A stretch of DNA of 64,000 bases from Fimbriosthenelais zetlandica (GCA_977030845.1 OZ365112.1:12772001-12836000), one strand, 5' to 3'; shown: positions 3,401-55,617, counted from the first letter of the stretch. The notes: generated by a model from the letters alone, not told the origin. Program-made: numbers and translations.

Positions 3401-6400
3401 CTCCTTGCCGTATTCCATTTCAATTGTTGATAAACAGATAAGTGGGGAGTCGTAGGCTTGCCTGCAGTAACCTATGATATGCTTGAACCTTGTGCTCCTC
3501 TCCGGGCTTCCGTGTCAGAGAGGGAGAGAGGGAGGGAAGATGGAGGAGTATGCAGTATAGCTAGTGAGCAATAACACCAGATGAAGTACAGTCATATATC
3601 TTAGCCCTGGGGATTATTTATACACAAAAAGGGCGAGGCCAATCTACTTTATCCAGGAGCAATAAGCAACACTCGCAGGCAAACGAGGAAAGGTTTCCAC
3701 ACACGGCCAGACAAGCATGTTTGAAGCTGGGTATAAATAATTCATGATTTATTGATTCATGTCAAACAATTGCTTCCTTATAAAGATAATCGGATGACTG
3801 CTTCCAAACGAAGTGCAACAATTGAAAGACTATGGAACATTTATTCCATTGTGATGAACATATTTTTCAGCAAGTCAGAATTTAATGATTTGAATTCTAT
3901 TTGGTTAACAAACACCCTGTATTCCAAGAGCCCAGCATTCAAACAGTAATTATCCATTTCAAGGGTAATTAAATATTTCCAAGAAAAGGGCCCAAACAGT
4001 CTGGTGTGCAGTGAGCTTGGAGGGCAATTGCCCCTGGCCAATGCCCATTTTGTCCAGGGCGATCATTAGAAGTTCCATTCAGGGAGCGTGTGGGTGGTCC
4101 CCACTAACCAGGGCTTCAAGATGGGTTATATTTGAAAAAAAAACCCATGTAACGTCAAGCCTTCAGTAGGTCTACTGTCAGACTAAATGGTTGAGAACTT
4201 GCCCATCCCCGCCCTTTTGCTAATAGTTTTATCCCACCAATAAATCAGGGAAGCTAAGATATATATGGATAGCACTTGTTAATATAAATAATTGCGCTAA
4301 CAACCACTCATTTTTTTCATAGATTTGTTTTTGTCTGTACACCTGAGAAGTATAGATCGGGTGCGGTGAGAGAGAAGAGGGTGTGGCAGAGGGGAGTAAC
4401 TTTTTCCTGGCATCTTCCATACAAGTGAACTTTTTTCCAACCACTCGCAGCGTGCATGTGTTTAAAGGCGCCTTGGTAGAACCCAAACCTACTTTGAACA
4501 AAAAACGTATACGTTGTGTGTGTAACATATGCTTTCAGTGTTTTGGTGGGATTGTGCTGCTTGGATACACTGTAGAGCGTTTTAAATGTGTTGCCATCTG
4601 GCCACCTGAAATGATGGAATGTCCGCCCATGAGGCAAGATGGGATACACGGGTTAAGTAGGCGAAAAGAATGATGAGACCATTACGAGGAGAGAAATATG
4701 GTGAAGGGAGTTAAATAGGCTTAATTGAAGGAAGTAGGGGAGGGAAAACAATAAGGCAAATGAAGAAGCTGAAGTTGAAGTCAGAAGAACTTCATCGAGT
4801 CTGACAGAAGGGATGTATGTATGAATTTAACACATATCTTTCCTCTAAAACTTTAACTTCTTCCTCCCCTTTTCCTTATCTATCTCCTTCCTTCAACAAG
4901 CTGAAACATTGACCAGAAAACTACAAGTGTATGCTTTCACCGAGGCCAGTGTTAGATAAACTCTTTCCATGGCTCGGGTGGTTTCAAACCGGTCATTCTC
5001 TCATCGCGTCTTTGAAGATCTGACTGTTGGCTGTCAGACTTTAGGGTTAACTTTCACACCCTTCATTGCTGTGATCTCGTTGAGTTCACGCTGATGTTGA
5101 TCCCCTCCAGGAAAGTTGAATCACTGTAGATTGTCAACGCATCACAAGGATTTCAAAAGAGGTAGTTACACCGAAAACGTGTGATGTTTCTCGCAAACAA
5201 GTGACCTATAAACCCTAAATTTAGTCTAAAGCCTCGTATCTTATGGCTGTTAGAAAACTTATCTTATGGCTATTCAATTATACTGTAAAAGATATACCCA
5301 TAGTACACTAAAGGACATTGGAACCTCATGTCCTGAAATTTCTTTGCCATATATACAATTGGGATATTCTAACTTCATATGCAAGGCAAAGGAAGTTCTA
5401 ACTGATACAAATATAACATAGCAGTAAAATGTCTTTCGCTGAATAGGATAACCTTCTCTTACGACCCCATGATAAAAGCAACGTCTATAATCGTTGGTAA
5501 AAGGCAGCTCTTACAGCCTATAATCAAACGGTTATAAATGAAGACGTTGGAAATACCAGTAAATTCAACTGCTGGTCATTTCACGCTAGTTTTACCTAAG
5601 TAATTTCTAAAGTATCCCGCTGATGATCCATCCTTGACATGATGGATCGCCGATGACTTTTACTACTCAATCTAAAGGTCTCCACAGCAGGGGTACATAG
5701 ACACTTCATCCATTTCTAATTTGGTCCCTGGCCCTCTCAGAACGTTATCACCATCTCTAAAATACCAAGTAAGAGCCATAAAAGTAACAATGTTCAGTAG
5801 TCAGGTCTCTAGAAACAGATAGAAACGAAATATTTATCATTTTCGTTCACATTTCTGAAGATGGTTTCCATTATAGTATTTCATGATTACCTATGACTGA
5901 AAGGAATAATTATATTATATTCCATGAGCAATCTAAACTATATATATGGATGGAGACTTCATTCATGAGGAATGCATTGCAAGACTGCCCCGTGGATCTG
6001 TTACAAACTTAAGACAACCTTCAAACAGAAGTAACAGTTTTATGTTTGTAGAAACATTTTAAGGACATTTTGAATGTGACCCATAGAAGTAGGGCTCTTG
6101 CTTTGGGTATGGATGTGGGTGGCGACTTGAGGTTTTGCCCACAGCAGCAGGCTACTGTAAACCAAGCCAGGCCCTCTCCAAGTGGGTTTATATCCTCACG
6201 AGCCTTCTCCTGGGTTTAAACCCTTTAGTCCTGCTAAATTGTGATGATTATGGGTGCCCTGTCTCTGCAGGGTTAACAAGATCAGCGCGTGCACCATTTA
6301 GAGAATAGATAACTGGTTGAAATGCTCTATGGGATTTAGGGTTACTCGGTCTTCTGCCTCGGCACAAGGAGCATGTCAATGTGCAATGTGCTTTATTCTT

Positions 6401-9400
6401 TGGTACACTAAACTTTGACAAGGAGAGTAAATAATGTAGCAACCCCAGAAAGCAACAAAGAGAGATGGCTTCAATGCATTCTAAGGAATTTGATGCCTCT
6501 TTCCAGTGTTTCATTCTAAAACTTCCAATTAGTCGTAGAAATAGATGCTATGAAAAATAGGATCAATCTATTTCACATTGCCCTCTTGTGTACACACGTA
6601 GAATGGTCAACTGGTTTAGATTGACATTGGAGAATACTAATCAGGGCCATGTTGTCATGAACCCAGAGAACAGTACATTCTTGTACAGCTCAGAGGTCTT
6701 CCAAGTTATTCCAAGGTCAGACTTCACCAATGATATTCACATATGGACCTTGCAAAAATCAGCTAATAAACTAGCCTTTGTCCATCCAACCATGTGTTGG
6801 ACACAGTAAGGTCAGGACTTAGTGTACGAAGGTCACTCTTACTTTCACACAAAGGTCAACTCCTGCAGGGCTGGCCCAGGAGACAGTGGTTAGTGTATTC
6901 TAATAGGTCGCCTCGTCAAACTGACCCTCTGACTGGTCAATGTTAAGCCATGCTTTCTCCTCGGGCTATGAGTCTTTCAGCCAACTCTGGCACGTGTAAA
7001 GAATATGGCATTAAAGAAAACCCTTGTGTTATATTTATCTTAGCATATCATTAGTGAACCAAAAAATGTTTACAAAGAAAGCTTATGTGAGCATTGGAAT
7101 CGACCTTTTCCAGGTTTGTACATGAAACAAAAAATTCCAATTTGCCTTTATGAATGTATGTATGAGAGTTATGAGATATTCATTGAGATAAGGACTAATA
7201 GACCATAGATTGACTTAATGAATGACACATGTTACAATACAGTATCAGGCAGAATGGGTGTTGTTTGGCAAGCAACAAAGGACTTAGAGATATGTGTCAT
7301 TTATCCCATATCTGCCCATGTAGATGGTCATTGTCAAGGTAGGATGCCAGGCGCCATGCCTAGCCCAAACATCGTCAGACTGTCATGGTCTAGAACTTGT
7401 GAAAATGATACCATGTTTATAGTTATAATTTTATTGCTCTCAAAGTGAGACAATTAGTCATGCAATTGTAGATGCATGGAGATAAAGGGAGAGTCTATTG
7501 CTTCATGTATGACTTGTATGAATGAAATGACTAGGCGGATATTGGGTTCCAACCTTTAAGAAATCTATATTAGCCATTCAAAGACCATCATGAGACATCA
7601 TGGATCTTAGCCATGTGTTGTAGTTGATGGGAGTTTGGACCGGGTCCTTGTTATGTGGGGACTAGGCCCGAGGCTAGAAACATCTTAGACCAAGGGGCAT
7701 TTCATAATAAATATCCACATCATTGGACAATGGTCCGTCTATATGGGCTGATGATGTATCTTTACCTCAAAAAAGGGGCCAGTGCTTAACTCCCAGACTT
7801 AACATTGTTAATCATTGTTTTGAAACAATGATTTTTAAGAACATTTAAGATTAAAGGTAATTTTCCCTATATAGAACACATAAATTAATTATTGAGACTG
7901 AACAAGGGAACTTTCGTCAAATTAAAATTGGACTTGAGCTGTGAATCTGCAGCATGCTGGGAGAAGGACTGTAGCCATTCAATGAGGGCTAACTGGTTAC
8001 TCCTGTAGGGAGCAGCTATAGGGGGTTGTCACGGCCAGTCACACGGCCCCACCTGGAGGCCCATCCTGGATCTGTTTCCCCTCACCTGGAGCCCGCCAAA
8101 CTGTCACCCACACCCCAGTACACCAGGCCTAGCCAGGTACTAATGGCCTCTCACGGCCTATAAAACTAGGGGATGTCCCTCAGCCAAATTGGAAAGGATA
8201 AAAATACTTAAATACTTATCTCTAGTATTATGTAATAATGGCAAACTAGGGGTTGCCCCTCGTTGAAATGGGAAGGATAAAAATATCCTTATCTTTAGTA
8301 TTATATAATATAATATCAATGGTCTATGCCTGGTCATTGGGATGTAGGCCTAATTGAGTCCTTGAGATAAGCTTTTGAGATTTTCCCATGATCATGAATC
8401 GGGAAGAATTTTGGATACTGATAGTTTCGGCTGGGAGAAAATCCATGGAAGAATACCAACACCTGAAAGCTACACCAGTTTCTAGATTGTTTAAATTGTG
8501 AACTTTTAGGTTCATTCTATTTCCCTAGAAACACTTTTGGACATTCCCAAGCCTTCACGGACGATGTAGATTTCCGTGTGTGCCTCTCTCCACCTCTTCT
8601 CTGTAGAGAGATGGAGAGACCTTTGGGAATATTATACCACCCTGGGATCCAATATATTACCCAGGTGCTTCATGGACAGGTGTCCAGTCAGGTGATCAAT
8701 CTGTTTATAAACAATCTCTAGGATGAGATATATGAGAGATGTGATCCCAGAGTATAAAGACAGAGAGAGGTGTGTACCTTAAAGGCGTGCACCCACTGTT
8801 ACGATAACTATTTAACATGAGTTACACCATAGAAGAAACACCTACAACGTAGTCAAAATTTATCTACATTCAAAGTAATTAAATTCGTTCATATGTATTC
8901 AGATTTGACTGTAAAAATGAATGTTGGCTGAATTTTAGGGGTCTCTCCCTCTTAAGTGCTCAGTGGTCGCTCATAATAGTGGATGCCCGGCCTAACCCCC
9001 ACCAAAAACAACAGACGCGCTCAATGGGCAAATAGAGGAGGATGAGAGGTGTTTGTTGGTGTTTATATATTGCTCACCCTGAACGTGGTGGTTAGTTTTG
9101 GGCTGCATGTTGTGCGTGATGACTTGATCTTTACACTGTCCCAAAGACTTGCTCAAGACTTGCCCCACCCCTTTCCAAAACCCTTGATTTTCCATTACTT
9201 TCCATGATTTCTTTTGGAGGTGTACTACATTGCTTTTATTAAAAAAAGAAATGAAGACCTCGACCTGTTTGTATTATGAGAAAATGTAAAATATTTGTCG
9301 TGAAGAAACCAATATTTCACAGAGATGCTCCTGTTTTGTGGGTAAAAATCATACAGTGGAAGACCAGTCATGTAGGCATGTGAATATGAAGATGAGTAGG

Positions 9401-44981: not shown

Positions 44982-47482
44982 ATGGAGGAGGAGGTGGCAA
45001 GTGGAAACGACAATATTGTCACAGAATTCCATACTTATGAGGAATTTCTGGATTCTCAAATTAATGAAGTCGATCTGTTTTATCTAGAGGTAGGTGTCTT
45101 TACGTAGATTTTGGTGCGTTATTCCTGAACGAGCTGATATACACAGTGTCATTATCGATCGATCGGCCGAAGGCGAAGGGGGAGGCTCAGCCGGTTCAGC
45201 TCAGGCTTTGCCAGTTTCTAGCAGGTCTACTACTCTTTGAGGGCAGCTAACACCTTGACACTGGCCGATTTCCTTATGAATGAACACTTTTATTATTGAG
45301 CCAAGTTATGGACATAATAGGAAACGATTTGGTTTCAGCATTGTAGCGTTTTGTTAGTAATTTCATAAAAGAAATCCGCCTCAAAATGTCCCCAAGACCC
45401 CAACCCTCTACTGGCTCTAGGCTCTAACTGGGTGGTGGCAGTAGCAGCAGCTCTAGCTTTGGCAGCATTTTAAAATTGAATTTGTGTCTTAATATATCCA
45501 AAGAGAACGTTCGAAATATTGAAGTGCTCACTTCGTTTTGTGGTCCGACATTATATGAAACAGACCCTCAGGTTCACTTAGCCCTTAGGCCTAATCTCTG
45601 GTCTTTTCATTGAGATGTATACCCTGACTGTGTCATGACTATAATCTATATATCTAAATGGTGTAATCTTTTCTAGGATGAAGAACTGGCGAGACAGTTG
45701 GTGGAACTCGGATATCGAGGAAGTGGAGAAGTCCTTAAAAGAGAAGAGTTCGAGGCCAGGAAGGCTGCAGCTGAAGCAAGTCGTTTATCTAAACGGAGTC
45801 AACAAAAGTACGCTCTCTTAATTCTCTTAGACTAGATCCATAACATAAAATTCATAAGTTGAGGTAATAAACTAATTTAGATCTAGATTTACTTTTGTTT
45901 AGCGCAATAAATTTATGGTTCCCACAGGTCCGGAAACCGGGAAAAGTCCGGGAATTTTTTAATATGTCTTCCGGGCCGGGAAATGTCCGGGAATTTGTGT
46001 ACGTTACCGTACAAATGAGTGGACGTAGTACAAAATTAGATTGATCTAGATCTCAATTTACTGTTGTATCTACAATATTTATATAATAGCGTGATTGATA
46101 TAAAATGCCACTTCGCTATGCTTTGTTTGTGATGCCACCACGCGGCTTTCTCGGGAATCAGGGCGCTCTACCCATTACAACCGCTGGATTTGCACCATTT
46201 TTTCAAGCGACTTCCGGAAGTAGCCGCCAAAGCCCCTAATATCGCTCACAACAAAAACACTGGCTTCATTCTCTGGCTATAAGCCTGTAAGCTCTATTCT
46301 TTTGGATGCGATAAATTCTTCATGAAAATCTACCCACGGATTTCAGTTTTGGCTCATTTAGGTGCTTTCATAATTCTATAAACGCCGTCTGAAAATTTCA
46401 ATCGACGCCCAGCTTTCACCGATATTAGTTCCCAGTTTTGCCGGTGGTGGAGTAGTAGCATGGGGCCGAAAGTAAACTTATCTTAGTTTCTTCATTTGCC
46501 ACAGGACGATCAACTTTTATAAATTATTTTCCTCACTATTGCTTATTATAAATGCATTATAATCTTTCATTATTTCAGAACACTCGCCAGTTCTGGAAAG
46601 GAACTCGGGGAAGATGATTTTCTGAAGGCATTGTCAAAGCGAGAAGAGGACAACCGAAGTGGGAAAATGACTTCTATAATCTTTATAAGAGATTATAACC
46701 ATAGAGGTCAGGAGATATCTGGATATATTGATTATGCTCATCGATTGAAAACCGAGGACTTTGAACCCTATTTTACTGGAAAGAAAAAACTACTGCCTCG
46801 CCCTTCTGATTTGAGGTAAGATCTATTAAAGGCCCAAACTGGATAATCAACAAATTAACATCGATATAAGTAATCTAATCAACTGAAAACAGCTACCAGG
46901 TTACTTTCTAGCAAGAAACCTGCACCAAAATACCTAAGCCGCCTACCCTGTAGCCTCTGATTTATTTAAATTCAATCAAATTCCTCTGCAGCTTTTACAA
47001 CTGGGAAACACAGACTTCGACATCTAACCCTACTCCAAACTACCAGGTCATAGCTGAGAACGCCACGGGTCTATTATTTAAAAACAAGAGAGATCGAAAG
47101 CCTCTTGATGTCGATCCCAAGGTGAGCAATAATTATCATATAAATAGGGTGTTACTGTATGATATCAGATAAAACAAATTTATTTAAATAAAGATTATAA
47201 AATGGATCAAATTGTCATTTTAAATTACATTTATTTTTCCAATCGATAACGATCTGATAGGCCATTCAAAGTTAATTTTGCCAAGCCATTGACATTTGTT
47301 GTTAAATTTCTTCTTTATTTACAATTTAATCTTTTCATGAAAGCTTTTGCATAATAATTTTTTCTTGGTAATCTTTATTTTAGGCAGCAAAACCTGGAGA
47401 TAATTCAACAAGGACTGTGATCGAAACGAAGAAATACACACAAGTAGTCATTTATGATCATATCACGAGGAGGAAAACTTAG
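44982..47482 (+). CDS. CFAP299: Cilia- and flagella-associated protein 299 (C4orf22), 234 aa. Exons: 44982-45089, 45677-45807, 46579-46815, 46992-47121, 47384-47482.
   Basis: The phase-consistent 705-nt ORF contains [11 protein letters not shown]...[69 protein letters not shown] and C-terminal [12 protein letters not shown]. These motifs are characteristic of C4orf22/CFAP299. Confidence 0.93.
45917..46000 (+). mobile_element. Terminal fragment of a similar GGTTCCCAC-type DNA element in CFAP299 intron 2
   Basis: ggttcccacagg followed by repeated ccgggaaa / tccgggaattt motifs. Confidence 0.4.
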
Positions 47483-47852
47483 TATTTCTTTAAGGATCTA
47501 AAAATATGGTGAAGGCGTAACTTGGCAAAAAGTAAATCTAGCGAAAATAATTCTACTGATAAATTTAAGTCATGAATAACTGGCCCTGCTTTGCAACTTT
47601 TTTTATATGTAATTCTTTGCTGTGAATTATCCGTCTTTTTACCTTCATGTCTCCCACGTAAATAAAATAAAACCTGCAGAACTGACTTCGTGTTAATTTA
47701 CCGGTAGTCATTTTTATAGTTGTATTTTATCTTTTCAAAGAAATAACACTCCCACTCGCCTCAGCAAATCAAACGAAAAACAAACAAAGCCCAAATCAAC
47801 ACTGCTTAGCCGAAAAAATGGGTAGCGACCCAGGGAGCAGTGAAAATTGATT

Positions 47853-47922
47853 TACTAGACGGGGAATCGAACCCCGGTCTCTCGCGTTCCTAGCAAGCAC
47901 GTTACCTCGAGACGACCACGCT
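47853..47922 (-). pseudogene. tRNA-derived (Asp/Gly-like) 70-nt cassette, copy 1; SINE-head-like or pseudo-tRNA
   Basis: Read on the minus strand: AGCGTGG TC GTCT CGAGGTA ACGT G CTTGC TAGGAAC GCGAG AGAC CGGGG TTCGATT CCCCG TCTAGTA. The B-box and T-arm are intact and the acceptor stem pairs poorly. Confidence 0.7.
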
Positions 47923-49235
47923 CATACACTCTCAATGCCCCCTGTAATTTAGAATGAACTACCCAGGGAAAGGTTTAATCACAATGTTTATTTATAAGTT
48001 TGCCCCCTAATCCCTCTTCGTCCCCCACCCCATCTCCATGTTCACCATCTATCACTCCCAGCAACTCCATCCATAAACCCCTGGCCCAATTTGAAACGGC
48101 TAACCTGTCAAAATCCCTCGGAATAGCCCACTGTTTAGGTACTGTCCCAATGTTATTTTTTTTTAGCCCCTTGGCCCCTCCCTGGCCCCCAAATACCACC
48201 CCCACCTCTATGTCTACCCCCGACATCCACCCCAACACCGTCCCAAAAATCCAGCTCGATTCTATGCTTCTAACCGCCAACGCCGGACCAACAGACCGAG
48301 AAGGGGCTAGATCATAGTACATGTAGTTCACTGTTTCGCCGCTATAAATCTCGGGTCGCTTCATCGCGCTAGCTTGCTCCTTCCATAGAGATCAATGCTG
48401 AAGACCTCAAATTCGCACCATTTTCAAAAATCGAAATTTTAAATTAATTTGATTTGCACAAATATTACATAGATACCTGGAGATGCTTCCAACTAAGAAT
48501 AATCCGTTTGAATTGTAATTTTAGACCCGTTATTAACAAAGTTATTCAACTTTTTCGACTTTTAGTGAGAGGGCGCTGTTAAGGTTTTTAAAAGGCCAAA
48601 TTATAGGCCTGTATACGCACGGCCGATTTGGCAACTTCGCAGAAATCGGGGTTTTCCACGTCTTTCGTCTCCGATCTTTTGAGATTTATCAGTAGATGTC
48701 ATAAGTTATACGTAACCGTGGTCTTGTGTGAAAATAATATGTATTAGGTAGAGTAAAAGCCGATTGTAGTGGACTGGTAAATCGGCTTTGTAGCACACAT
48801 TCCTGTAATCGTGAGTGATTTTTAACATTGCGCCTATGGGCGGGACACTTTTGCTGAATCGAATGGATTTAGACATGTTAGCCTTTTCGAATCGGGCTGG
48901 ATTTTTAGGAGGGAGTTGGGGTGGGTGCCGGGGGTAGACATGGGGCTGGGGGTGGACATTGGGGGCCGGGGAGGGGTCCCGGGGGCTAAATATTTTTTAG
49001 CATAGGAGCCTATGGGCGTTACCTACACATTGGCCTATTCCAAGGGATTTTAACAGGTTAGCCGTTTCAAATCGGACTGGGGTTTTTGAAGGGGTTGGTG
49101 GGACTGCTGGAGAGTGGACATGGGGTTGGGGGACGGGGAGGGGTCCGGGGGGCAAGCTAATTATAAACATTGTGATTGAGCCTTCACATTTGAGGGATTG
49201 TCCTGCAATGACCTAAAAGGCAAGGGGAGTGTGTG

Positions 49236-49305
49236 TGCGTGGTAGTCTAGAGGTAAGACTCTCGCCCGGAATGCGAGAGACCGGGGTTCGATTCCACATT
49301 TTGTA
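49236..49305 (+). pseudogene. tRNA-derived 70-nt cassette, copy 2
   Basis: TGCGTGG TA GTCT AGAGGTA AGAC T CTCGC CCGGAAT GCGAG AGAC CGGGG TTCGATT CCACA TTTTGTA. D and anticodon stems are perfect, the T stem is damaged, and the acceptor pairs mostly by G-U. Confidence 0.7.
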
Positions 49306-49964
49306 AATCACTTTTCGCTGCTTAGAGTGTTGATTTTGGCTTTGGTTTTGGTTGTTTGAGTTGCTGATGAGAGGAGGGCGGGGGCTAGAGGAACTAAGTT
49401 CCATAGAGTTAACGTTGGCCTCTTTGTCATAATAATAGCTAGATATATATCCAAGCTTAGATATATATATCCAGCCTTGCGACCTTGCGGCGTCTCTCTT
49501 CCTCTGTCCTCTTCATTCTCCGCTCTCTCCGTTCTCTGTATCCAATGCCACACCCCTTCAGTGCCCCTCAATCTGGCTCTGCGAACCTCCCACCCGTGGC
49601 CTCTTGAAGCTCTCTGACCACTGAAGCGTTATGTATTGGTATGCTATGCAAAGGTATAGGCCTATGCATAGATGACAAGCTGGGGACATGCACCTACCCC
49701 CTCTCATGCTTCAGTGCGCAGTGACTTGGACCACCCGCCCACCCACTCTCCGAAACCCACGACTGGAATCAAACTAAACATCAAATATAGGAGGACAAGG
49801 ACTTGTCAAATCAGTGTCAAAACTCGGACATCGAAAAAGTATATCACTGCGTATTTTTACCTCTGTGGGATAATGTCTAGTGGGTGATCTAAGTAAATAC
49901 GAAACTAAAAGGCCAACTTCAACTGAATGGAGCTTAGTTCCTCTAGTGGCCTTAATTATGCGCG

Positions 49965-50470
49965 CCTCGATCGATTGTGAGTAGTTCATAAAAATGACGA
50001 TTTTTTTATTTTTCTAATTTCTCGAAAACTACCGGGCCTAAAATTACGATCTCTTCGGAATATTCTTAGTTGGGAGCCGAACTAGGTTAGGACATACCTT
50101 TTGAATCAATAAAGTTGATTTAAAACTTTCGATTTTCAAAATTGACCGAATTTTCACCCTCAGCATTGATCCCAATGGAAGAAGCAGCAAGCGCGACAGT
50201 GGCGACCCGAGTTGCAGCGGCGACTAGGTGAACTACCAGTGCTCTCTCTATCCAGTTTCAGTGAAGCTATTAGACGATTTAGCATTGGCGGTGTCAACCC
50301 CGAAAAATCAGCACATTTTCAAAATCTCAAGTTTTAAATCAATTTTATTCATTCAAAAAGTGTGTACTACCATACTTCGGCTCTCAACTAAGATTTCCCC
50401 TAATTTTAGACCCCTTAGTTTTCGAGAAAATAAAGAAATAAAAAAAACACATACAATTTTGCTCGATGTT
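49965..50470. mobile_element. Palindromic MITE-like element of about 500 bp, related to the spacer of the neighbouring repeat
   Basis: tttctcgaaaacta..cctaaaatta..cttagttgggagccgaa (left) is inverted against ttcggctctcaactaag..taattttagacccc..tagttttcgagaaa (right). Segment 50150-50240 is an inverted, diverged copy of 48320-48410. No target duplication was identified. Confidence 0.6.
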
Positions 50471-51528
50471 ATTTAGCCCAGCCCCCAACCCCAGCCCCGC
50501 CCCATCCCTAAATCCCAGCACAAATCTGACCCACTTCCCATACCAAACAATCCCACCCACTCTGATATCAGCCAGGAGTTGAGAGCGTTGTATCCTTGGG
50601 TAGATCATAGTAGTGTAGTTCATCTTTTTGCCGCTATAAATCTCGGGGTCGCTTCAAACGCTCTGGCTTGTTCTTCCATAGAGTCCAATGCTAAAGACCT
50701 CATTTGGCTGCATTTTCAAAAGTCGAAATTTTAAATAAAGTTTACTTGAACAAAAACCATATGGATACTTGGAGATGCTTCCAACTAAGAATAATCCGTT
50801 TGAATTGTAATTTTAGAACGATTATTTACAGAGATATTAAACTTTTTCGACTTTTAGTGAGAGGGCGCTGTTAAGGTTTTTAAAAGGCCAAATTATAGGC
50901 CTGTATACGCACGGCCGACTTGTCAACTTCGCACAAATCGGATTTGTCCACGTCTTTCGTCTTCGATCTTTTGAGATTTATCAGTAGATGTCATAAGTTA
51001 TACAAAACCGTGGTCTTGAGTGAAAATAATATGTATTAGGTAGAGTAAAAGCCGATTGTAGTGGACTGGTAAATCGGCTTTGTAGCACACATTCCTGTAA
51101 TCGTGAGTGATTTTTAACATTGCGCCTATGGGCGGGACACTTTTGCAGAATTCAATGGATTTAGACATATTAGCCTTTTCGAATCGGGCTGGATTTTTAG
51201 GAGGGAGTTGGGGTGGGTGCCGGGGGTAGACATGGGGCTCGGGGTGGAGGTTGGGGGCCTGGGAGGGGTCCGGGGGGCTAAATAATTTTTAACATTGGAG
51301 CCTATGGGCAGTGCCAACACAGTGGCCTATTCCAAGGGATTTTAACAGGTTAGCCGTTTGAAATCGGACTGAGGTTTTTGGAGGGGGTTGGTAGGACCGC
51401 TGGAGGGTGGACATGGGGTTGGCGGACGGGGAGGGGTCCGGGGGGCAAGCTAATTATAAACGTTGTGATTGAGCCTTGAAATTTGAGGGAGTGTCCTGCA
51501 ATGACCTGAAAGGCAGATTGTGTGTGTG

Positions 51529-51598
51529 AGCGTGGTAGTCTAGAGGTAAGACTCTCGCCTGGAGTGCGAGAGTCCGGGGTTCGGTTCCCGGTCTTGTA
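51529..51598 (+). pseudogene. tRNA-derived 70-nt cassette, copy 3
   Basis: AGCGTGG TA GTCT AGAGGTA AGAC T CTCGC CTGGAGT GCGAG AGTC CGGGG TTCGGTT CCCGG TCTTGTA, followed by TTTT at 51605-51608. Confidence 0.7.
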
Positions 51599-51844
51599 AA
51601 TCACTTTTCGCTGCTTAGAGTGTTGATTTTGGCTTTGGTTTTGGTTGTTTGAGTTGCTGATGAGAGGAGGGCGGGGGCTAGAGGAACTAAGTTCCATAGA
51701 GTTAACGTTGGCCTCTTTGTCATAATAATAGCTAGATATATATCCAACCTTAGATATATATATAGGCCTATCCTGAAGCTTGAGACCAAAATAGCTTTAC
51801 TGTTTTTATTCAATCCCGAGAGTGACTTGAGAGCTTCAGTGTGT

Positions 51845-51914
51845 AGGCAAGTAGTCTAGAGGTAAGAAACTGGCCGGTGACGCGAGAGACCGGGGTTCGA
51901 TTCCCTGTCTCGTA
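51845..51914 (+). pseudogene. tRNA-derived 70-nt cassette, copy 4
   Basis: AGGCAAG TA GTCT AGAGGTA AGAA A CTGGC CGGTGAC GCGAG AGAC CGGGG TTCGATT CCCTG TCTCGTA, followed by T6 at 51922-51927. Confidence 0.65.
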
Positions 51915-53219
51915 AATCCCGTTTTTTAAACCTGGTGCCTTTTTGAGTTTAGTTGTGTCATCAAATTATCGATTCCATTTCGATAGGGGTATAAGTGATA
52001 TAACTAAGTTTTTATTGAATCCCGAGCGTTTGGTTGTACAAGGTGGAAGAGGAGTTGGTTAACCTGGCCTACATACAAGGATTATTTCACAGCCTTTATT
52101 ATCCAGACATGACGAATAGACGAATCGACAGAGATGATAAAGATAAAGATGATTAGAAGGAGTAGGTGGGAGTAGGCTACAGTAGGTGCATCTCCTCCGC
52201 CGGTCAGTGGTAGTGTGTTTTGGTGGTCAGCCGTGGACAGCCGTGTTTACTCAGGGTAGGACATAGGCCTACAGCCATGGATCGAAGAGGTGGAACCATT
52301 ACCATATGTTCGACACTAGGCCTAGACACAATCGCAACACCTGGAAAGAATCGATAAATTAAAAAAAATGTTGAAATGGCCCCAAATAGGATTGGAAACG
52401 GTTGCCACATTTCAAGATGTGCATGCAACGTTACATAGGCTATTAAGCTACTCTCTATCAGATATGGTGATACAAAATCTATGATAAAAAAGGCACATAA
52501 AAGAACTAGGGCCTATATGCTAGGCCTAAATCTGTGACGAAAGTGGGAGGGGGACCTATTTTAATGAGAGCTGATTAGCCTACGCCTAGGCCCCTAGGCC
52601 TATAGTGTCGTAACCTCCGGATGAGTGTCATTTTCTTATCATTGTAAAATGTCTATCTAGGCCTAGGCTCAGGGTTAATTAAGATAGGATTAGGTTAGGG
52701 TGAGGTAATGGTTTAGGGTTATCATAGTTACTAAATATTTGAACTCAAGATTAGGCCTACCCAGTTGACCATTCACTGAGCATTGGGCATTAGTTCCCGC
52801 TTTTGCCGGTGGTGGGGTAGGCGCATGGGGCAGTTCATTCGTTTGCCGTTTACTTTCCCGTTTATTTTTTGTTTAAACTGGGGGATGGGGATGGTATATT
52901 TTCTTTTTTTCCGAAGAGTTCTTGGCTAGTTCATAGAACTGCAGCAAAGCATCTTTGAATGTAGCCTGTAGGCCCTAACTCTCTACTTCTATGGTTTATG
53001 ATAGGCTACTGCCACAGGCGGTAAGATGGGGAACTATCAAGAAAGCAGCTGATTATCGTAAAATTTAAATCAAGAAATATATGATTTTATAGCATTATAT
53101 CATAGTATCACGACGTTACATCGACGGGCTGTTTAAATCAGTCTTCAATATAATCAATATATCAATATAATGCCAGTTTCAGTTTGCTGCATTTACATCC
53201 GAACAATTTCCGGCAGTCG

Positions 53220-53227
53220 TGACGTCA
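53220..53227. promoter_or_regulatory. Palindromic CRE (TGACGTCA) immediately upstream of the WBP2 start codon
   Basis: Exact TGACGTCA ending 16 nt before the ATG, with TTCCGG at 53208-53213. Confidence 0.35.
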
Positions 53228-53243
53228 TGTGTACACAGACAAG

Positions 53244-55617
53244 ATGGCGTTGAACACAGCTCATGCGAGCGGGGGTGTCCTCATTTACAGCGGAGAAAGG
53301 TATAGTATCTTTGTTGATTGGACGGTTTCTCCTCAGTAAACTAACATTTGTAATCCCCTCTGTGTCTATTTTGATTTTGATGATCTATCACGGCTGTAAA
53401 CTCGTAAAACTACCAACAAACTTGATAGATATATCGCTGTTCGCCTAACCTCAGGCTCAGCCTGGCCCAGCCCAAGAAAACAAGAGTGCGTCATTTGATA
53501 AAAGTTCTATTTCAACTTCCTCATGATATTAACAACTTCGCATTGGTTGGTGGTCCCATATGTTATGTATTTTAATGTAATAATAATCGTGTTCTGAACA
53601 ACAGTCAATAGACTAGTCACATGCACACAAACATGGACTTGTCATCACAGTCATGTGACTATTTAATTTTTAGGCTAACTCAGTACCGGTAGGCCTACTG
53701 GTACACATAGTCATTTAAGACGTTTCTTGTTTTGTTCTAGAATACTCATCTTTCATGATGGAGTGGAAATGTCTTTTGACATGGACTGCAACATGCCCCA
53801 CTTCAAGGGTACGAAGAAAGGAAGAATTTACCTTACTACCCACCGGGTAAATATTTTTGTTACGGAGCCTATTTAGGCCTATATAATGTTAATAATAGGC
53901 ATATTTCTCTTAATAATTATTCATTTACCTGCTGGAACCTTATTTTCTCGGAGTTCAACTTCGAGTGCAGGAATAAACATACCGCTCTTACCGGCCAGTG
54001 ACATGAAATATAGAATCAAATAATTCTTGCAATCTTTTGTTTCTAGGTAATATTCAACAGCAAAAGTGACAAGGACACATTGCAGTCTTTCTCTTTGCCT
54101 TTCTACTGTATGCGTAGAGTGGAGCTGGAGCAGCCCATATTTGGAGCTAACTACATCAAGGGTCAAGTCCGGGCGGAGCCAAGTGGTAAGTTTCCCACTT
54201 TGGGTCATAAAATAAATTAATATTTAAGTCAATTTCACTCCAAACCCCATTCATTAATTACCGTACCGGTACCGGTACATAATATTATATTATTAGCTTA
54301 TACTATAAATAAATCAAAATGCATAGATCTTAGAGTAGCCGATGTCCTATAATATTACTTTGTATCTTTGATTTGCAGGGAACTGGGAAGGAGAAGGGAA
54401 ATTTAAACTTGTTTTTAAAGATGGAGGCGCTATTGAGTTCGGCCAGGCAATGTTAAAGGCGGGACAACTTGGTAAGTATTTGTAATTTTTCTCTTTTTGC
54501 TGGTACCTAAAAATACAAATGTATTTCAGTATTGCAAATGTTTGTTGAATATTTTCAGCCACACGAAACATGAGAGAGCAGCCTCCCCCATACACCCCGC
54601 CTACAGGGCCGTACTACCAGGCGCCCCCGCCGGCCTATGCTCCACCTACAGACCCACAGTTTGGATTCCTTCCACTAAATACCTTCCCCAACGCACCTCC
54701 AGGTAATTCAATTAAAACATAAATCTTTAAAGTTTAAATTTCTCTACTGATTTGAAGAATAAAGATAAATTAATTTAGTAATTTATCATTTTAATACTTG
54801 TTCTAAATTAACATTTTTATACTAATTCACAAAATGAAGATCAATATAAACTAAAGAGTAAATTAATTCAATACTTTGTAATTTTAGTACCGTACAGTAT
54901 TGTTACACAGTATTTATTCCATTAGATATTTATTTTATTATTTATTTTTCAGCTAATGGTGTCTTTATGACTGAAGCTCCTCCACCTTATCCAGGAATGA
55001 ACCCTGCCTACCCTCCTCCTCCTCCCCAGCAGAATGTTTACCCTCCTCCAGGGCCAAACTACCCGCCACAGGCTGGTCAGTACCCCCCACCACAATACAA
55101 TGGCTACCCACCACAGTACCCTCCCCAGTACCCCCCTCCTCAGATGAACGGAGCCATGGGTGGAGGACCACCCATGTCTTCTTCAGGTACTCATGATTCT
55201 ACCACTCATAGAGATTCATAACTAAAGGAACTTATGGAAATATTAGGGTAATACTAATAGAAATTGAGAGCTAGTTAAACTGTTGGATTGTCCCTTTTAA
55301 ATTTATATTTGTCTTTTCTTTTTCAATTTTAATACCCATGTGTTTCTGGGTTGGATTTAAAAAAATATTTTTGCGTGTTTTAATTGTTTTGTATTTTATG
55401 AATTTTGTATTCCGATTCGGTCCAAACTGTAAATTTAATTAATTTGTTTTCGTAATTTTCAGATGCTAAAGCTGCGGAGGCAGCCCAGTCGGCCTACTAT
55501 AACCCAGCTAACCCCAGTAATGTCTACATGCCTCAGCAGGACCCATACGCTCCACCAGCCTACAACCCTGGCTATGCTCCCCCTCCTTATTCTGATGTTA
55601 ACAAAAAGGACCAGTAA
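53244..55617 (+). CDS. WBP2: WW domain-binding protein 2, 308 aa. Exons: 53244-53299, 53741-53846, 54047-54185, 54379-54471, 54559-54702, 54953-55186, 55463-55617.
   Basis: N-terminal GRAM-like region ([51 protein letters not shown]), then a Pro/Tyr-rich region and [18 protein letters not shown]. All match human WBP2 motifs, and the splice phases are consistent. Confidence 0.95.

What the first reader, a model, noticed from the sequence alone, without database searches (positions are those of the whole stretch)
47755..51930. Palindromic cassette with outward-facing tRNA-like Pol III units, then partly re-duplicated
Seen in sequence: two arms of about 500 bp form an inverted repeat. Each arm carries a 70-nt tRNA-like unit near its outer end, so two putative Pol III promoters point away from a shared spacer of about 600 bp. 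Spacer plus right arm is repeated 2293 bp downstream, and a fourth unit follows. All four units keep identical cloverleaf spacing with no indels, while their flanks carry indels. Each has a T4-T6 run 6-7 nt downstream. Known: tRNA-derived SINE heads keep the A/B boxes and lose the acceptor stem, but they normally lead into a body and tail and do not sit inside terminal inverted repeats. Inference: this could be an undescribed composite mobile element with tRNA-like units in its arms, a source of short (~80 nt) Pol III RNAs, or a TFIIIC-type boundary between CFAP299 and WBP2.
Basis: partly seen in the sequence, partly recalled or inferred. Interest (0 to 1): 0.75.

Follow-up and report, generated by a model that had tools for sequence, protein, structure and literature searches.

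The report
Mosaic of tRNA-tipped foldback/tandem repeats
The "palindromic cassette" is real sequence, but it is three neighbouring pieces of different age from one non-coding repeat family of this (probably annelid) genome. Its tRNA-like units are worn SINE-type modules that keep only their RNA polymerase III promoter boxes and stop signal, and nothing shows that they do a job here.

Summary
In detail: four tRNA-like units, two inverted arms of about 500 bp, and a direct repeat offset by 2293 bp. The reading as one composite element that was then re-duplicated does not hold.

- **Left arm (47755-48275).** It is an old inverted fragment, about 74% identical to every sampled copy, including the neighbouring right arm. 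No other locus spans its junction at 48275.
- **The "spacer plus right arm".** This is the H-S2-A-T-b1 part of a 2.29-kb unit that elsewhere forms short head-to-tail arrays. That subfamily is small and regional: 15 of 16 exact signature hits lie on this contig at 5.8-13.2 Mb.
- **The downstream copy.** It is 98-99% identical to copies at other loci but only 92% to the upstream copy, so it is not a local re-duplication.
- **The fourth unit.** It lies in a separate 186-bp SINE-like insertion with a 20-bp target duplication, and paralogous empty sites exist.
- **Conservation across 51 units.** The A and B boxes are conserved, the anticodon arm and acceptor drift, and there is no covariation.

True foldbacks of the superfamily exist elsewhere, with arms 94-96% identical. 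This scan has already met the family on other DNA of this genome. Transcription and TFIIIC binding could not be tested: no sequencing run was listed.

The parts
47755..48275 (-). Old inverted arm fragment. It holds body b1 (47755-47815), a 25-nt insertion, tRNA-like unit 1 and part of the G-rich A arm. Its inner end is at 48275.
   Evidence: It is about 74% identical to every sampled copy, including the local right arm. Its 100-bp core (48175-48275) is 84-87% identical to copies on C1, C10, C11, C19 and C25, and all those hits stop at 48275. No other locus spans the junction.
47852..47922 (-). tRNA-like unit 1. The B-box block is intact and the A box carries changes.
   Evidence: Alignment A1. 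Per-region identity: B-box block 22/22, A-box block 12/18. Below the Rfam tRNA threshold.
48276..48555 (+).
   Evidence: 48275-48370 is 92% identical to the centre of an <H.H> palindrome at C13:12536196. H of copy 1 differs from the young consensus at 47 sites in 250 bp.
48556..48817 (+).
   Evidence: Module map. Nearly identical to the young consensus.
48818..49199 (+). G-rich arm A, made of two subrepeats of 167-176 bp.
   Evidence: Direct-repeat family D4 with spacing 167-168. Self-hits q519-687 and q695-873.
49200..49379 (+). SINE-like module 1: a leader of about 35 nt, tRNA-like unit 2 (49236-49306), T4 runs at 49299-49302 and 49312-49315, and body b1.
   Evidence: In L040, L044 and L046 the body b1 is followed directly by a second leader plus unit, which sets both ends of the module. 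Rfam tRNA 34.8 bits. Alignment A2.
49301..51763 (+). Young tract of 1.07 units, in the order b1, M1, M2, <H, B3, H, S2, A, T, b1, M1'.
   Evidence: No difference from the young consensus after 49300, except 4 sites in the TA microsatellite. It is 97.3-97.6% identical to L032, L033 and L038 over 1.9-2.2 kb, and 96.5% to L031 over 1.5 kb.
49440..49472 (.). TA-rich microsatellite inside the unit. The array ends in its second copy at about 51763.
   Evidence: Read. The same site is expanded to about 1.1 kb of (TA)n in L032.
49699..50249 (+). Unexplained tract of very low diversity inside the unit (M2 plus <H).
   Evidence: pi is 0.00-0.02 here against 0.06-0.18 elsewhere among 11 full units, and this is not a CpG effect. 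No Rfam hit and no unusual fold.
50001..50446 (.). Internal palindrome of H-type modules: <H at 50001-50236 and a partial H> at 50302-50446.
   Evidence: Inverted repeats I4 and I10. Self-hits.
50598..51763 (+). Second copy of H-S2-A-T-b1-M1', including tRNA-like unit 3 (51529-51599).
   Evidence: It is 91.8% identical to copy 1. It is 98.6%, 98.3% and 97.9% identical to C13:11235704, C19:37604861 and C13:10812977. Rfam tRNA 33.8 bits.
51823..52008 (+). Separate 186-bp SINE-like insertion carrying tRNA-like unit 4 (51845-51915) and a T6 run at 51922-51927.
   Evidence: It is flanked by 20-nt direct repeats at 51803-51822 and 52009-52028 (18/20, read). Five paralogous sites join the two flanks with the 20-mer present once. 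The same element sits in other contexts in L050.

Best explanation
The block 47755-52028 is not one element. It is a mosaic of three neighbouring pieces of a genome-specific, non-coding repeat superfamily.

**The superfamily.** Its basic form is a foldback: inverted arms built from module H, module S2 and a G-rich arm A made of subrepeats. A SINE-like module of about 180 bp lies beyond the outer end of at least one arm. That module is a leader, a tRNA-derived A-box/B-box mini-gene with its own T-run, and a body.

**Piece 1 (47755-48275).** An old, inverted outer-arm fragment.

**Piece 2 (about 48276-51763).** One and a half head-to-tail units of a 2.29-kb derivative that is confined almost wholly to a 13-Mb stretch of this contig. 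Its upstream part is old and patchily converted. From 49301 onward it is a young tract nearly identical to copies elsewhere.

**Piece 3 (51823-52008).** An independent SINE-like insertion with a 20-bp target duplication.

**How it most likely works (inferred).**
- The 74-nt tRNA-derived core was, or still is, a Pol III-driven SINE-type retroposon. That would explain why its A and B boxes and terminator survive while the anticodon arm and acceptor drift.
- The kilobase units spread at the DNA level. Homology-driven copying (ectopic recombination or gene conversion, perhaps through circular or rolling-circle intermediates) places them into or beside resident older copies.
- This would give permuted blocks slightly longer than one unit, no target duplications, mosaic ages and regional confinement.
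- The palindrome in this window is a by-product of that juxtaposition.
For: **Shown.**
- Every part is multicopy: about 800-1500 first-look matches each.
- The canonical order M1-M2-<H-B3-H-S2-A-T-b1 recurs head to tail at more than 20 loci whose flanks are unrelated.
- The left arm is equally distant (about 74%) from all copies, and its junction is unique.
- Copy 2 is 98-99% identical to distant copies and 92% to copy 1.
- The old-to-young switch falls inside homologous sequence at 49300, with no scar.
- Young blocks are permuted and slightly exceed one unit: L038 is one unit plus 22 bp, L031 is 1.15 units, and the window tract is 1.07 units.
- No target duplications were found at 11 block ends.
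- The exact signature of the subfamily has 16 genome hits, 15 on C13 at 5.8-13.2 Mb and 1 on C19.
- True foldbacks have arms 94-96% identical.
- Unit 4 has a 20-nt duplication, and five empty paralogous sites exist.
- In 14 old units the A-box block is 87% and the B-box block 92% conserved, against 72% for the anticodon arm and 59% for the 5' acceptor.
- There is no covariation: 81.5% of cells are paired against 82.0% in shuffles.
- The block shared between SINE subtypes runs exactly from the A box to the T run, 74 nt.
- No ORF exceeds 129 aa, and the two longest ORFs, the only ones scanned, have no Pfam domain.
Against: - The DNA-level copying mechanism is inferred from pattern only. No intermediate, empty site or polymorphism was seen for the 2.29-kb unit.
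The termini of the superfamily and a possible autonomous partner were therefore not determined.
- Recurrent break points (q24, q1085, q1331, q1432, q1945, where q = window coordinate minus 48299) could be real transposon ends that I failed to recognise.
- The very low diversity of 49699-50249 is unexplained and might point to a different active element or to selection.
- Regional confinement also fits local hopping of a cut-and-paste element.
Confidence: 0.7

Rival explanations
1. The cassette is one composite foldback transposon whose terminal inverted repeats carry tRNA-like units. On this view it is old, its left arm has lost its inner half, and its right arm has been overwritten by younger copies.
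For: Both arms end outward at the same family coordinate, the end of b1 (47755 and 49384). The young tract starts only about 85 bp inside that end. Foldbacks with the order <T <A <S2 <H. H> S2> A> T> exist (L049). On other chromosomes, inverted pairs of the arm core recur about 1.66 kb apart.
Against: The arms are 74% identical, against 94-96% in clear foldbacks. No target duplication brackets 47755-49384. The junction at 48275 is unique. The left arm is no closer to copy 1 than to any other copy. In L051 the unit lies outside the palindrome, on one side only.
Confidence: 0.15
2. The tRNA-like units are working Pol III mini-genes or TFIIIC-bound sites. They would be sources of RNAs of about 80 nt, or a boundary between the upstream gene and the WBP2-like gene, and selection would maintain them in place. 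This is not exclusive of the main reading.
For: The B box matches the consensus GGTTCGANNCC perfectly. The A box matches 9 of 11 positions, the box spacing is suitable, and a T4-T6 run follows each unit. The boxes are conserved across diverged subfamilies. All 100 listed matches, of 104, to the A-box to B-box pattern have the same 17-nt spacing, although 15-19 was allowed.
Against: Within the young subfamily, private changes are not rarer in the B-box block (0.50 per site) than in the flanks (0.24-0.30). Among 11 full units the unit is the most diverse module (pi 0.121). There is no covariation. Box conservation is what SINE source-copy selection alone would give. No RNA or ChIP data could be obtained.
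Confidence: 0.1
3. The duplication offset by 2293 bp is an assembly artefact.
For: Repeats of this kind are hard to assemble, and no reads could be laid on the region.
Against: The two copies differ at about 8% of sites and belong to different age classes. Artefactual duplications are normally near-identical. The same tandem layout recurs at more than 15 other loci with the same period.
Confidence: 0.03
4. The block is a decayed remnant of a tandem cluster of genuine tRNA genes.
For: Units 2 and 3 pass Rfam's tRNA threshold, and the units sit in kilobase tandem repeats.
Against: The acceptor stem is not formed: 65.6% of cells pair and two positions are mismatched in most copies. The 'anticodon' varies (GGA, AGA, GCA, TGA, GTG). 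The called Ser identity lacks the long variable arm that tRNA-Ser has (established knowledge). The unit lies inside a mobile 186-bp insertion at 51823-52008.
Confidence: 0.02

Closest known systems
tRNA-derived SINEs (heads that keep the A and B boxes and lose the acceptor stem)
   Same: The 74-nt core has an A box, a perfect B box, intact D, anticodon and T stems, and a degenerate acceptor. The boxes are conserved and the rest drifts. The core is dispersed over all large contigs. One copy (51823-52008) shows a target duplication and empty paralogous sites.
   Different: A T4-T6 terminator follows the core at once, so a Pol III transcript would stop before the body. A leader of about 35 nt precedes the tRNA part. 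No poly-A or LINE-type tail was recognised. Most copies sit at fixed positions inside kilobase foldback or tandem units rather than as solo insertions.
Foldback (FB-type) elements, such as Drosophila FB and sea-urchin TU (from my own knowledge, not tested against reference sequences)
   Same: Both have long inverted arms that contain tandem subrepeats. Both show variable arm length and no coding capacity. Both show frequent rearranged, nested and partial copies.
   Different: No fixed termini or target duplications were found. The arms carry Pol III-type tRNA-derived modules at or beyond their tips. The derivative here forms head-to-tail arrays with a 2.29-kb period. No transposase partner is known.
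SINE-derived satellites and tandem repeats (scaled reptiles, PMC10702118; the limpet PcH-Sat, PMC11121367)
   Same: In both, tRNA-SINE-derived sequence is incorporated into tandemly repeated units, blurring the line between dispersed and tandem repeats.
   Different: In those cases, by title and abstract, the repeats derive from portions of the SINE itself. Here the SINE-like module is under a tenth of a 2.29-kb unit. Arrays here have only 1-4 units and are scattered over many loci.
tDNA and ETC-type TFIIIC insulators (from my own knowledge)
   Same: Perfect B boxes lie between two genes.
   Different: No binding or boundary evidence exists. The sites belong to a family of about a thousand copies with no positional conservation shown.

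Membership tests
tRNA-derived SINE | Internal Pol III A and B boxes in a tRNA-related head | tested here: met
   Alignment of 51 units. The A-box/D-arm and B-box/T-arm columns are at least 90% conserved, and the B box reads GGTTCGATTCC.
tRNA-derived SINE | Discrete insertions flanked by target-site duplications, with empty sites | tested here: inconclusive
   Met for the fourth unit: 20-nt duplication at 51803-51822 and 52009-52028, and five empty paralogous sites. Not shown for units 1-3, which sit at a constant junction inside the larger unit.
tRNA-derived SINE | A LINE-related, poly-A or simple-repeat 3' tail, and a body transcribed from the head | tested here: not met
   The elements end without an A-rich or simple-repeat tail. 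A T4-T6 run lies 6-7 nt after the tRNA-like part. A LINE partner could not be searched.
Foldback-type transposon | Long, closely matching inverted arms with internal subrepeats | tested here: inconclusive
   Met in the superfamily: L049 94%, L051 95% over 887 bp, L050 84-99%. In the window the arms are only 74% identical and of different origin.
Foldback-type transposon | Defined termini and a target duplication of fixed length | tested here: not met
   No duplication at 11 block ends. Block ends fall at many different unit coordinates.
Foldback-type transposon | An autonomous relative that encodes a transposase | not testable with these tools
No ORF over 129 aa, and no Pfam hit for the two longest ORFs, the only ones scanned.
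Genuine tRNA gene | A full cloverleaf with a paired acceptor stem and a stable anticodon | tested here: not met
   Acceptor helix 65.6% paired. No covariation. The anticodon calls vary among copies. Units 1 and 4 fall below Rfam's threshold.
Helitron / Helentron derivative | 5' TC and 3' CTRR ends with a short 3' hairpin | tested here: not met
   The recurrent block ends read show none of these.
Penelope-like element or retrozyme | Hammerhead ribozyme motifs in the repeated ends | tested here: not met
   The Rfam scan of 46000-54000 at E up to 1 found no hammerhead.
Satellite or macrosatellite DNA | Head-to-tail arrays of one unit | tested here: met
   Arrays of 1-4 units with periods of 2.29, about 1.73 and 2.57 kb at more than 15 loci. 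They are short and dispersed, not long blocks.

The most novel reading that the evidence does not exclude
The superfamily could be a mobile carrier of working Pol III/TFIIIC sites. Its A box, B box, fixed 17-nt spacing and terminator would be kept by selection because TFIIIC binding or a short Pol III RNA is needed. The need could be the spread of the foldback units or a host use such as chromatin boundaries. Chromosome-specific variants would then mark locally homogenised sets of such sites.
Probability: 0.1. Interest if true: 0.7.

Novelty: new variant of a known kind. Interest (0 to 1): 0.3.

Why it matters
For this locus, little. The cassette is repeat debris between a gene noted as CFAP299 and a WBP2-like gene, and it should be masked rather than annotated as tRNA genes or as a new element.

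At genome level the family is more interesting.
- About a thousand copies combine foldback arms, kilobase tandem units and self-contained Pol III-type mini-genes.
- Subfamilies are specific to chromosomes or regions, and copies show mosaic, conversion-like ages.
- I found no paper describing this combination in four searches of the held library.
- It could serve as a system for studying how SINE modules are recruited into DNA-level repeats, and whether dispersed B boxes recruit TFIIIC in a spiralian.

Tried and rejected
- **Helitron reading.** The recurrent ends lack TC/CTRR and a 3' hairpin.
- **Penelope-like or retrozyme reading.** This was prompted by tandem copies with an inverted 5' piece. 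No hammerhead was found in Rfam.
- **LTR-like reading of the L031 copy.** Its terminal redundancy of about 365 bp has no TG..CA ends and no duplication.
- **A MITE at 49385-49946 bounded by the 43-nt inverted repeats.** Independent copies on other contigs run straight through its supposed right end, so this was left open.
- **LINE-type element ending in the TA microsatellite.** L038 reads through that site.
- **Target duplications at block ends.** None were found.
- **Sequencing runs for expression or assembly checks.** None was listed.
- **Pfam on the two longest ORFs of the block and on three WBP2-like ORFs.** No hits.
- **RNA folding of the low-diversity tract.** Nothing unusual.
Only L051 was obtained.
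- **One pattern search.** It returned nothing because I had miscounted the gap. It was corrected.


Full report
**Observation.** I read 47400-52400 and ran repeat, tRNA and Rfam scans. The inverted arms, the direct repeat offset by 2293 bp and the four tRNA-like units are all present.
- The arms match at 74% over 444 bp by gapped BLAST. Gapless pieces are 76-85% complementary.
- The direct repeat is 91.8% identical over 1169 bp.
- Units 2 and 3 pass Rfam's tRNA threshold (34.8 and 33.8 bits against 29). Units 1 and 4 do not.
- Each unit is followed after 6-7 nt by a T4-T6 run.

**What the pieces are.** Every part has roughly 800-1500 first-look matches in the 447-Mb genome. This holds for the 'spacer', the arm, the unit and the stretch between the copies. 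I fetched 51 loci and mapped modules on them. The recurring unit has the order M1-M2-<H-B3-H-S2-A-T-b1 and is 2.29 kb long. Variants of about 1.73 and 2.57 kb also occur. The units stand head to tail in arrays of 1-4.
- H is a 250-bp module that always appears as a palindrome, <H ... H>.
- A is a G-rich arm of two subrepeats of about 170 bp.
- T is the tRNA-like unit.

Flanks of the blocks are unrelated between loci, so these are discrete dispersed blocks and not large segmental duplications.

**The palindrome is a juxtaposition.** The left arm (47755-48275) is about 74% identical to every sampled copy and is no closer to its neighbour. A 100-bp core of it is 84-87% identical to copies on five other contigs. 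All those matches stop at 48275, and no other locus spans that junction. True foldbacks of the superfamily look different. L049 has arms 94% complementary over 487 nt. L051 has arms 95% over 887 bp, in the order <A <S2 <H. H> S2> A>. L050 has arms of 84-99%.

**The 're-duplication' is not local.**
- In the H-S2-A-T-b1 region, the downstream copy is 98.6%, 98.3% and 97.9% identical to copies at C13:11.24 Mb, C19:37.60 Mb and C13:10.81 Mb. The upstream copy is at most 92.6% identical to anything.
- I compared copy 1 site by site with the consensus of the young copies. Differences are dense in H (47 in 250 bp), sparse in S2 and moderate in A and T. They stop at 49300, the 3' end of unit 2. After that only four differences remain, all in the TA microsatellite.
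- The young tract is therefore 49301-51763, or 1.07 units, and it joins the older copy inside homologous sequence without a scar.
- Other young blocks are likewise permuted and slightly longer than one unit: L038 is one unit plus 22 bp and L031 is 1.15 units.
- No target duplications were found at 11 block ends.

An exact signature of this subfamily's anticodon arm occurs 16 times in the genome. Fifteen hits are on this contig between 5.8 and 13.2 Mb, and one is on C19. A looser A-box to B-box pattern has 104 exact matches and none in the control. These show contig-specific variants, and arrays with other periods occur on C27.

**The tRNA-like unit.** An alignment of 51 units (A1) shows near-invariant A-box/D-arm and B-box/T-arm blocks and a variable anticodon arm and acceptor.
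- In 14 diverged units, identity to the consensus is 87% for the A-box block and 92% for the B-box block. It is 72% for the anticodon arm and 59% for the 5' acceptor.
- There is no covariation: 81.5% of cells pair against 82.0% in shuffles, and the acceptor helix pairs in only 65.6% of cells.
- ARAGORN's anticodon calls vary among copies.
- Within the young subfamily, private changes are not rarer in the B-box block than in the flanks. The unit is the most diverse module among 11 full units (pi 0.121).
That holds across the family (48 of 52 units are 71 nt long), and the unit is not better conserved than the arm beside it.

This is the pattern expected of SINE heads. Source copies need the promoter boxes, and inserted copies then drift.

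The unit is part of a module of about 180 bp with set ends (49200-49379), because in L040, L044 and L046 the body is followed directly by a second leader plus unit. The block shared between the two body subtypes runs exactly from the A box to the T run, 74 nt.

**The fourth unit.** It lies in a 186-bp insertion (51823-52008) flanked by 20-nt direct repeats that match at 18 of 20 positions. At five paralogous sites on C11 and C27 the two flanks are joined, with the 20-mer present once. The same element also occurs in other contexts. This is the one clear insertion signature in the block.

**Mechanism (inferred).** The core is a Pol III-type SINE module. The kilobase units seem to spread as DNA. 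The evidence is regional confinement, permuted blocks just over one unit long, the lack of duplications, mosaic ages, and young tracts that abut older family copies (the window, L031, L033, L034). I favour homology-driven copying, possibly through circular intermediates. Local hopping of an unrecognised transposon is not excluded.

**Not tested.** No sequencing run was listed, so neither expression nor the assembly could be checked. The 8% divergence between the copies argues against an assembly artefact. No ORF in the block exceeds 129 aa, and the two longest ORFs, the only ones scanned, have no Pfam domain. Downstream ORFs at 53727-55221 (+) carry motifs that I recall from human WBP2, but no tool confirmed this. 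The upstream CFAP299 assignment rests only on an earlier first-reader note.

**Earlier work of this scan.** Several follow-ups on other DNA of this genome describe the same 'tRNA-tipped foldback' family of about 1,000 copies. I reached the multicopy, drift and box-conservation results independently. From those follow-ups I took the foldback reading, and I tested it on L049 and L051. Four literature searches found SINE-derived satellites and mollusc SINE families. None found a description of this combination.

Noticed in passing
window 49699-50249: A 550-bp tract inside the 2.29-kb unit is almost invariant among 11 units (pi 0.00-0.02), while the rest of the unit has pi 0.06-0.18. This is not a CpG effect. 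There is no Rfam hit, no ORF and no unusual fold. Related copies of about 480 bp exist on their own on C1, C9, C10, C11 and C19 at 81-85% identity.
   Followed up: partly
window 49385-49427 and 49904-49946: 43-nt inverted repeats (84%) bound 562 bp inside the unit and look like MITE ends. The left arm's homology stops exactly at 49384-equivalent. Independent copies elsewhere, however, run through the right 'end'.
   Followed up: partly
window 47663-47730: Weak Rfam match to mir-10 (27.2 bits against a gathering score of 47.5) just left of the block. Most likely chance.
   Followed up: no
window 53727-55221 (+): ORFs carry motifs that I recall from human WBP2: a GRAM-like stretch with FKGTKKG and FGANYIKG, then PPPY-rich segments. 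The repeat block would then lie about 1.7 kb upstream of the first such exon. Pfam gave no hit on these short pieces.
   Followed up: partly
L032:8238-9326 (C13:5.805 Mb): In this copy the TA microsatellite of the unit has expanded to about 1.1 kb of (TA)n.
   Followed up: no
genome-wide, e.g. C27:4346585-4352797 and C27:3107330-3110075: The tRNA-like core has contig-specific anticodon-arm variants. On C27 it stands in arrays with periods of about 2054 and 1350 bp, so other regional subfamilies exist.
   Followed up: no
L044 (C13:6.73 Mb) and L046 (C13:6.95 Mb): Two blocks 220 kb apart, in opposite orientation, are 97.4% identical and share the same rearranged layout. This suggests an inverted duplication of a whole block.
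   Followed up: no
L050:2741-3609 and 5871-6849: A local direct duplication of about 3.1 kb (90-99% identical) carries the SINE-like element and its downstream flank.
   Followed up: no
one search hits, e.g. C25:9779979-9781796 and C21:19881651-19882055: Convergent pairs of tRNA-like units about 206 bp apart recur on several contigs. An earlier follow-up read these as meeting ends of inverted arms.
   Followed up: no
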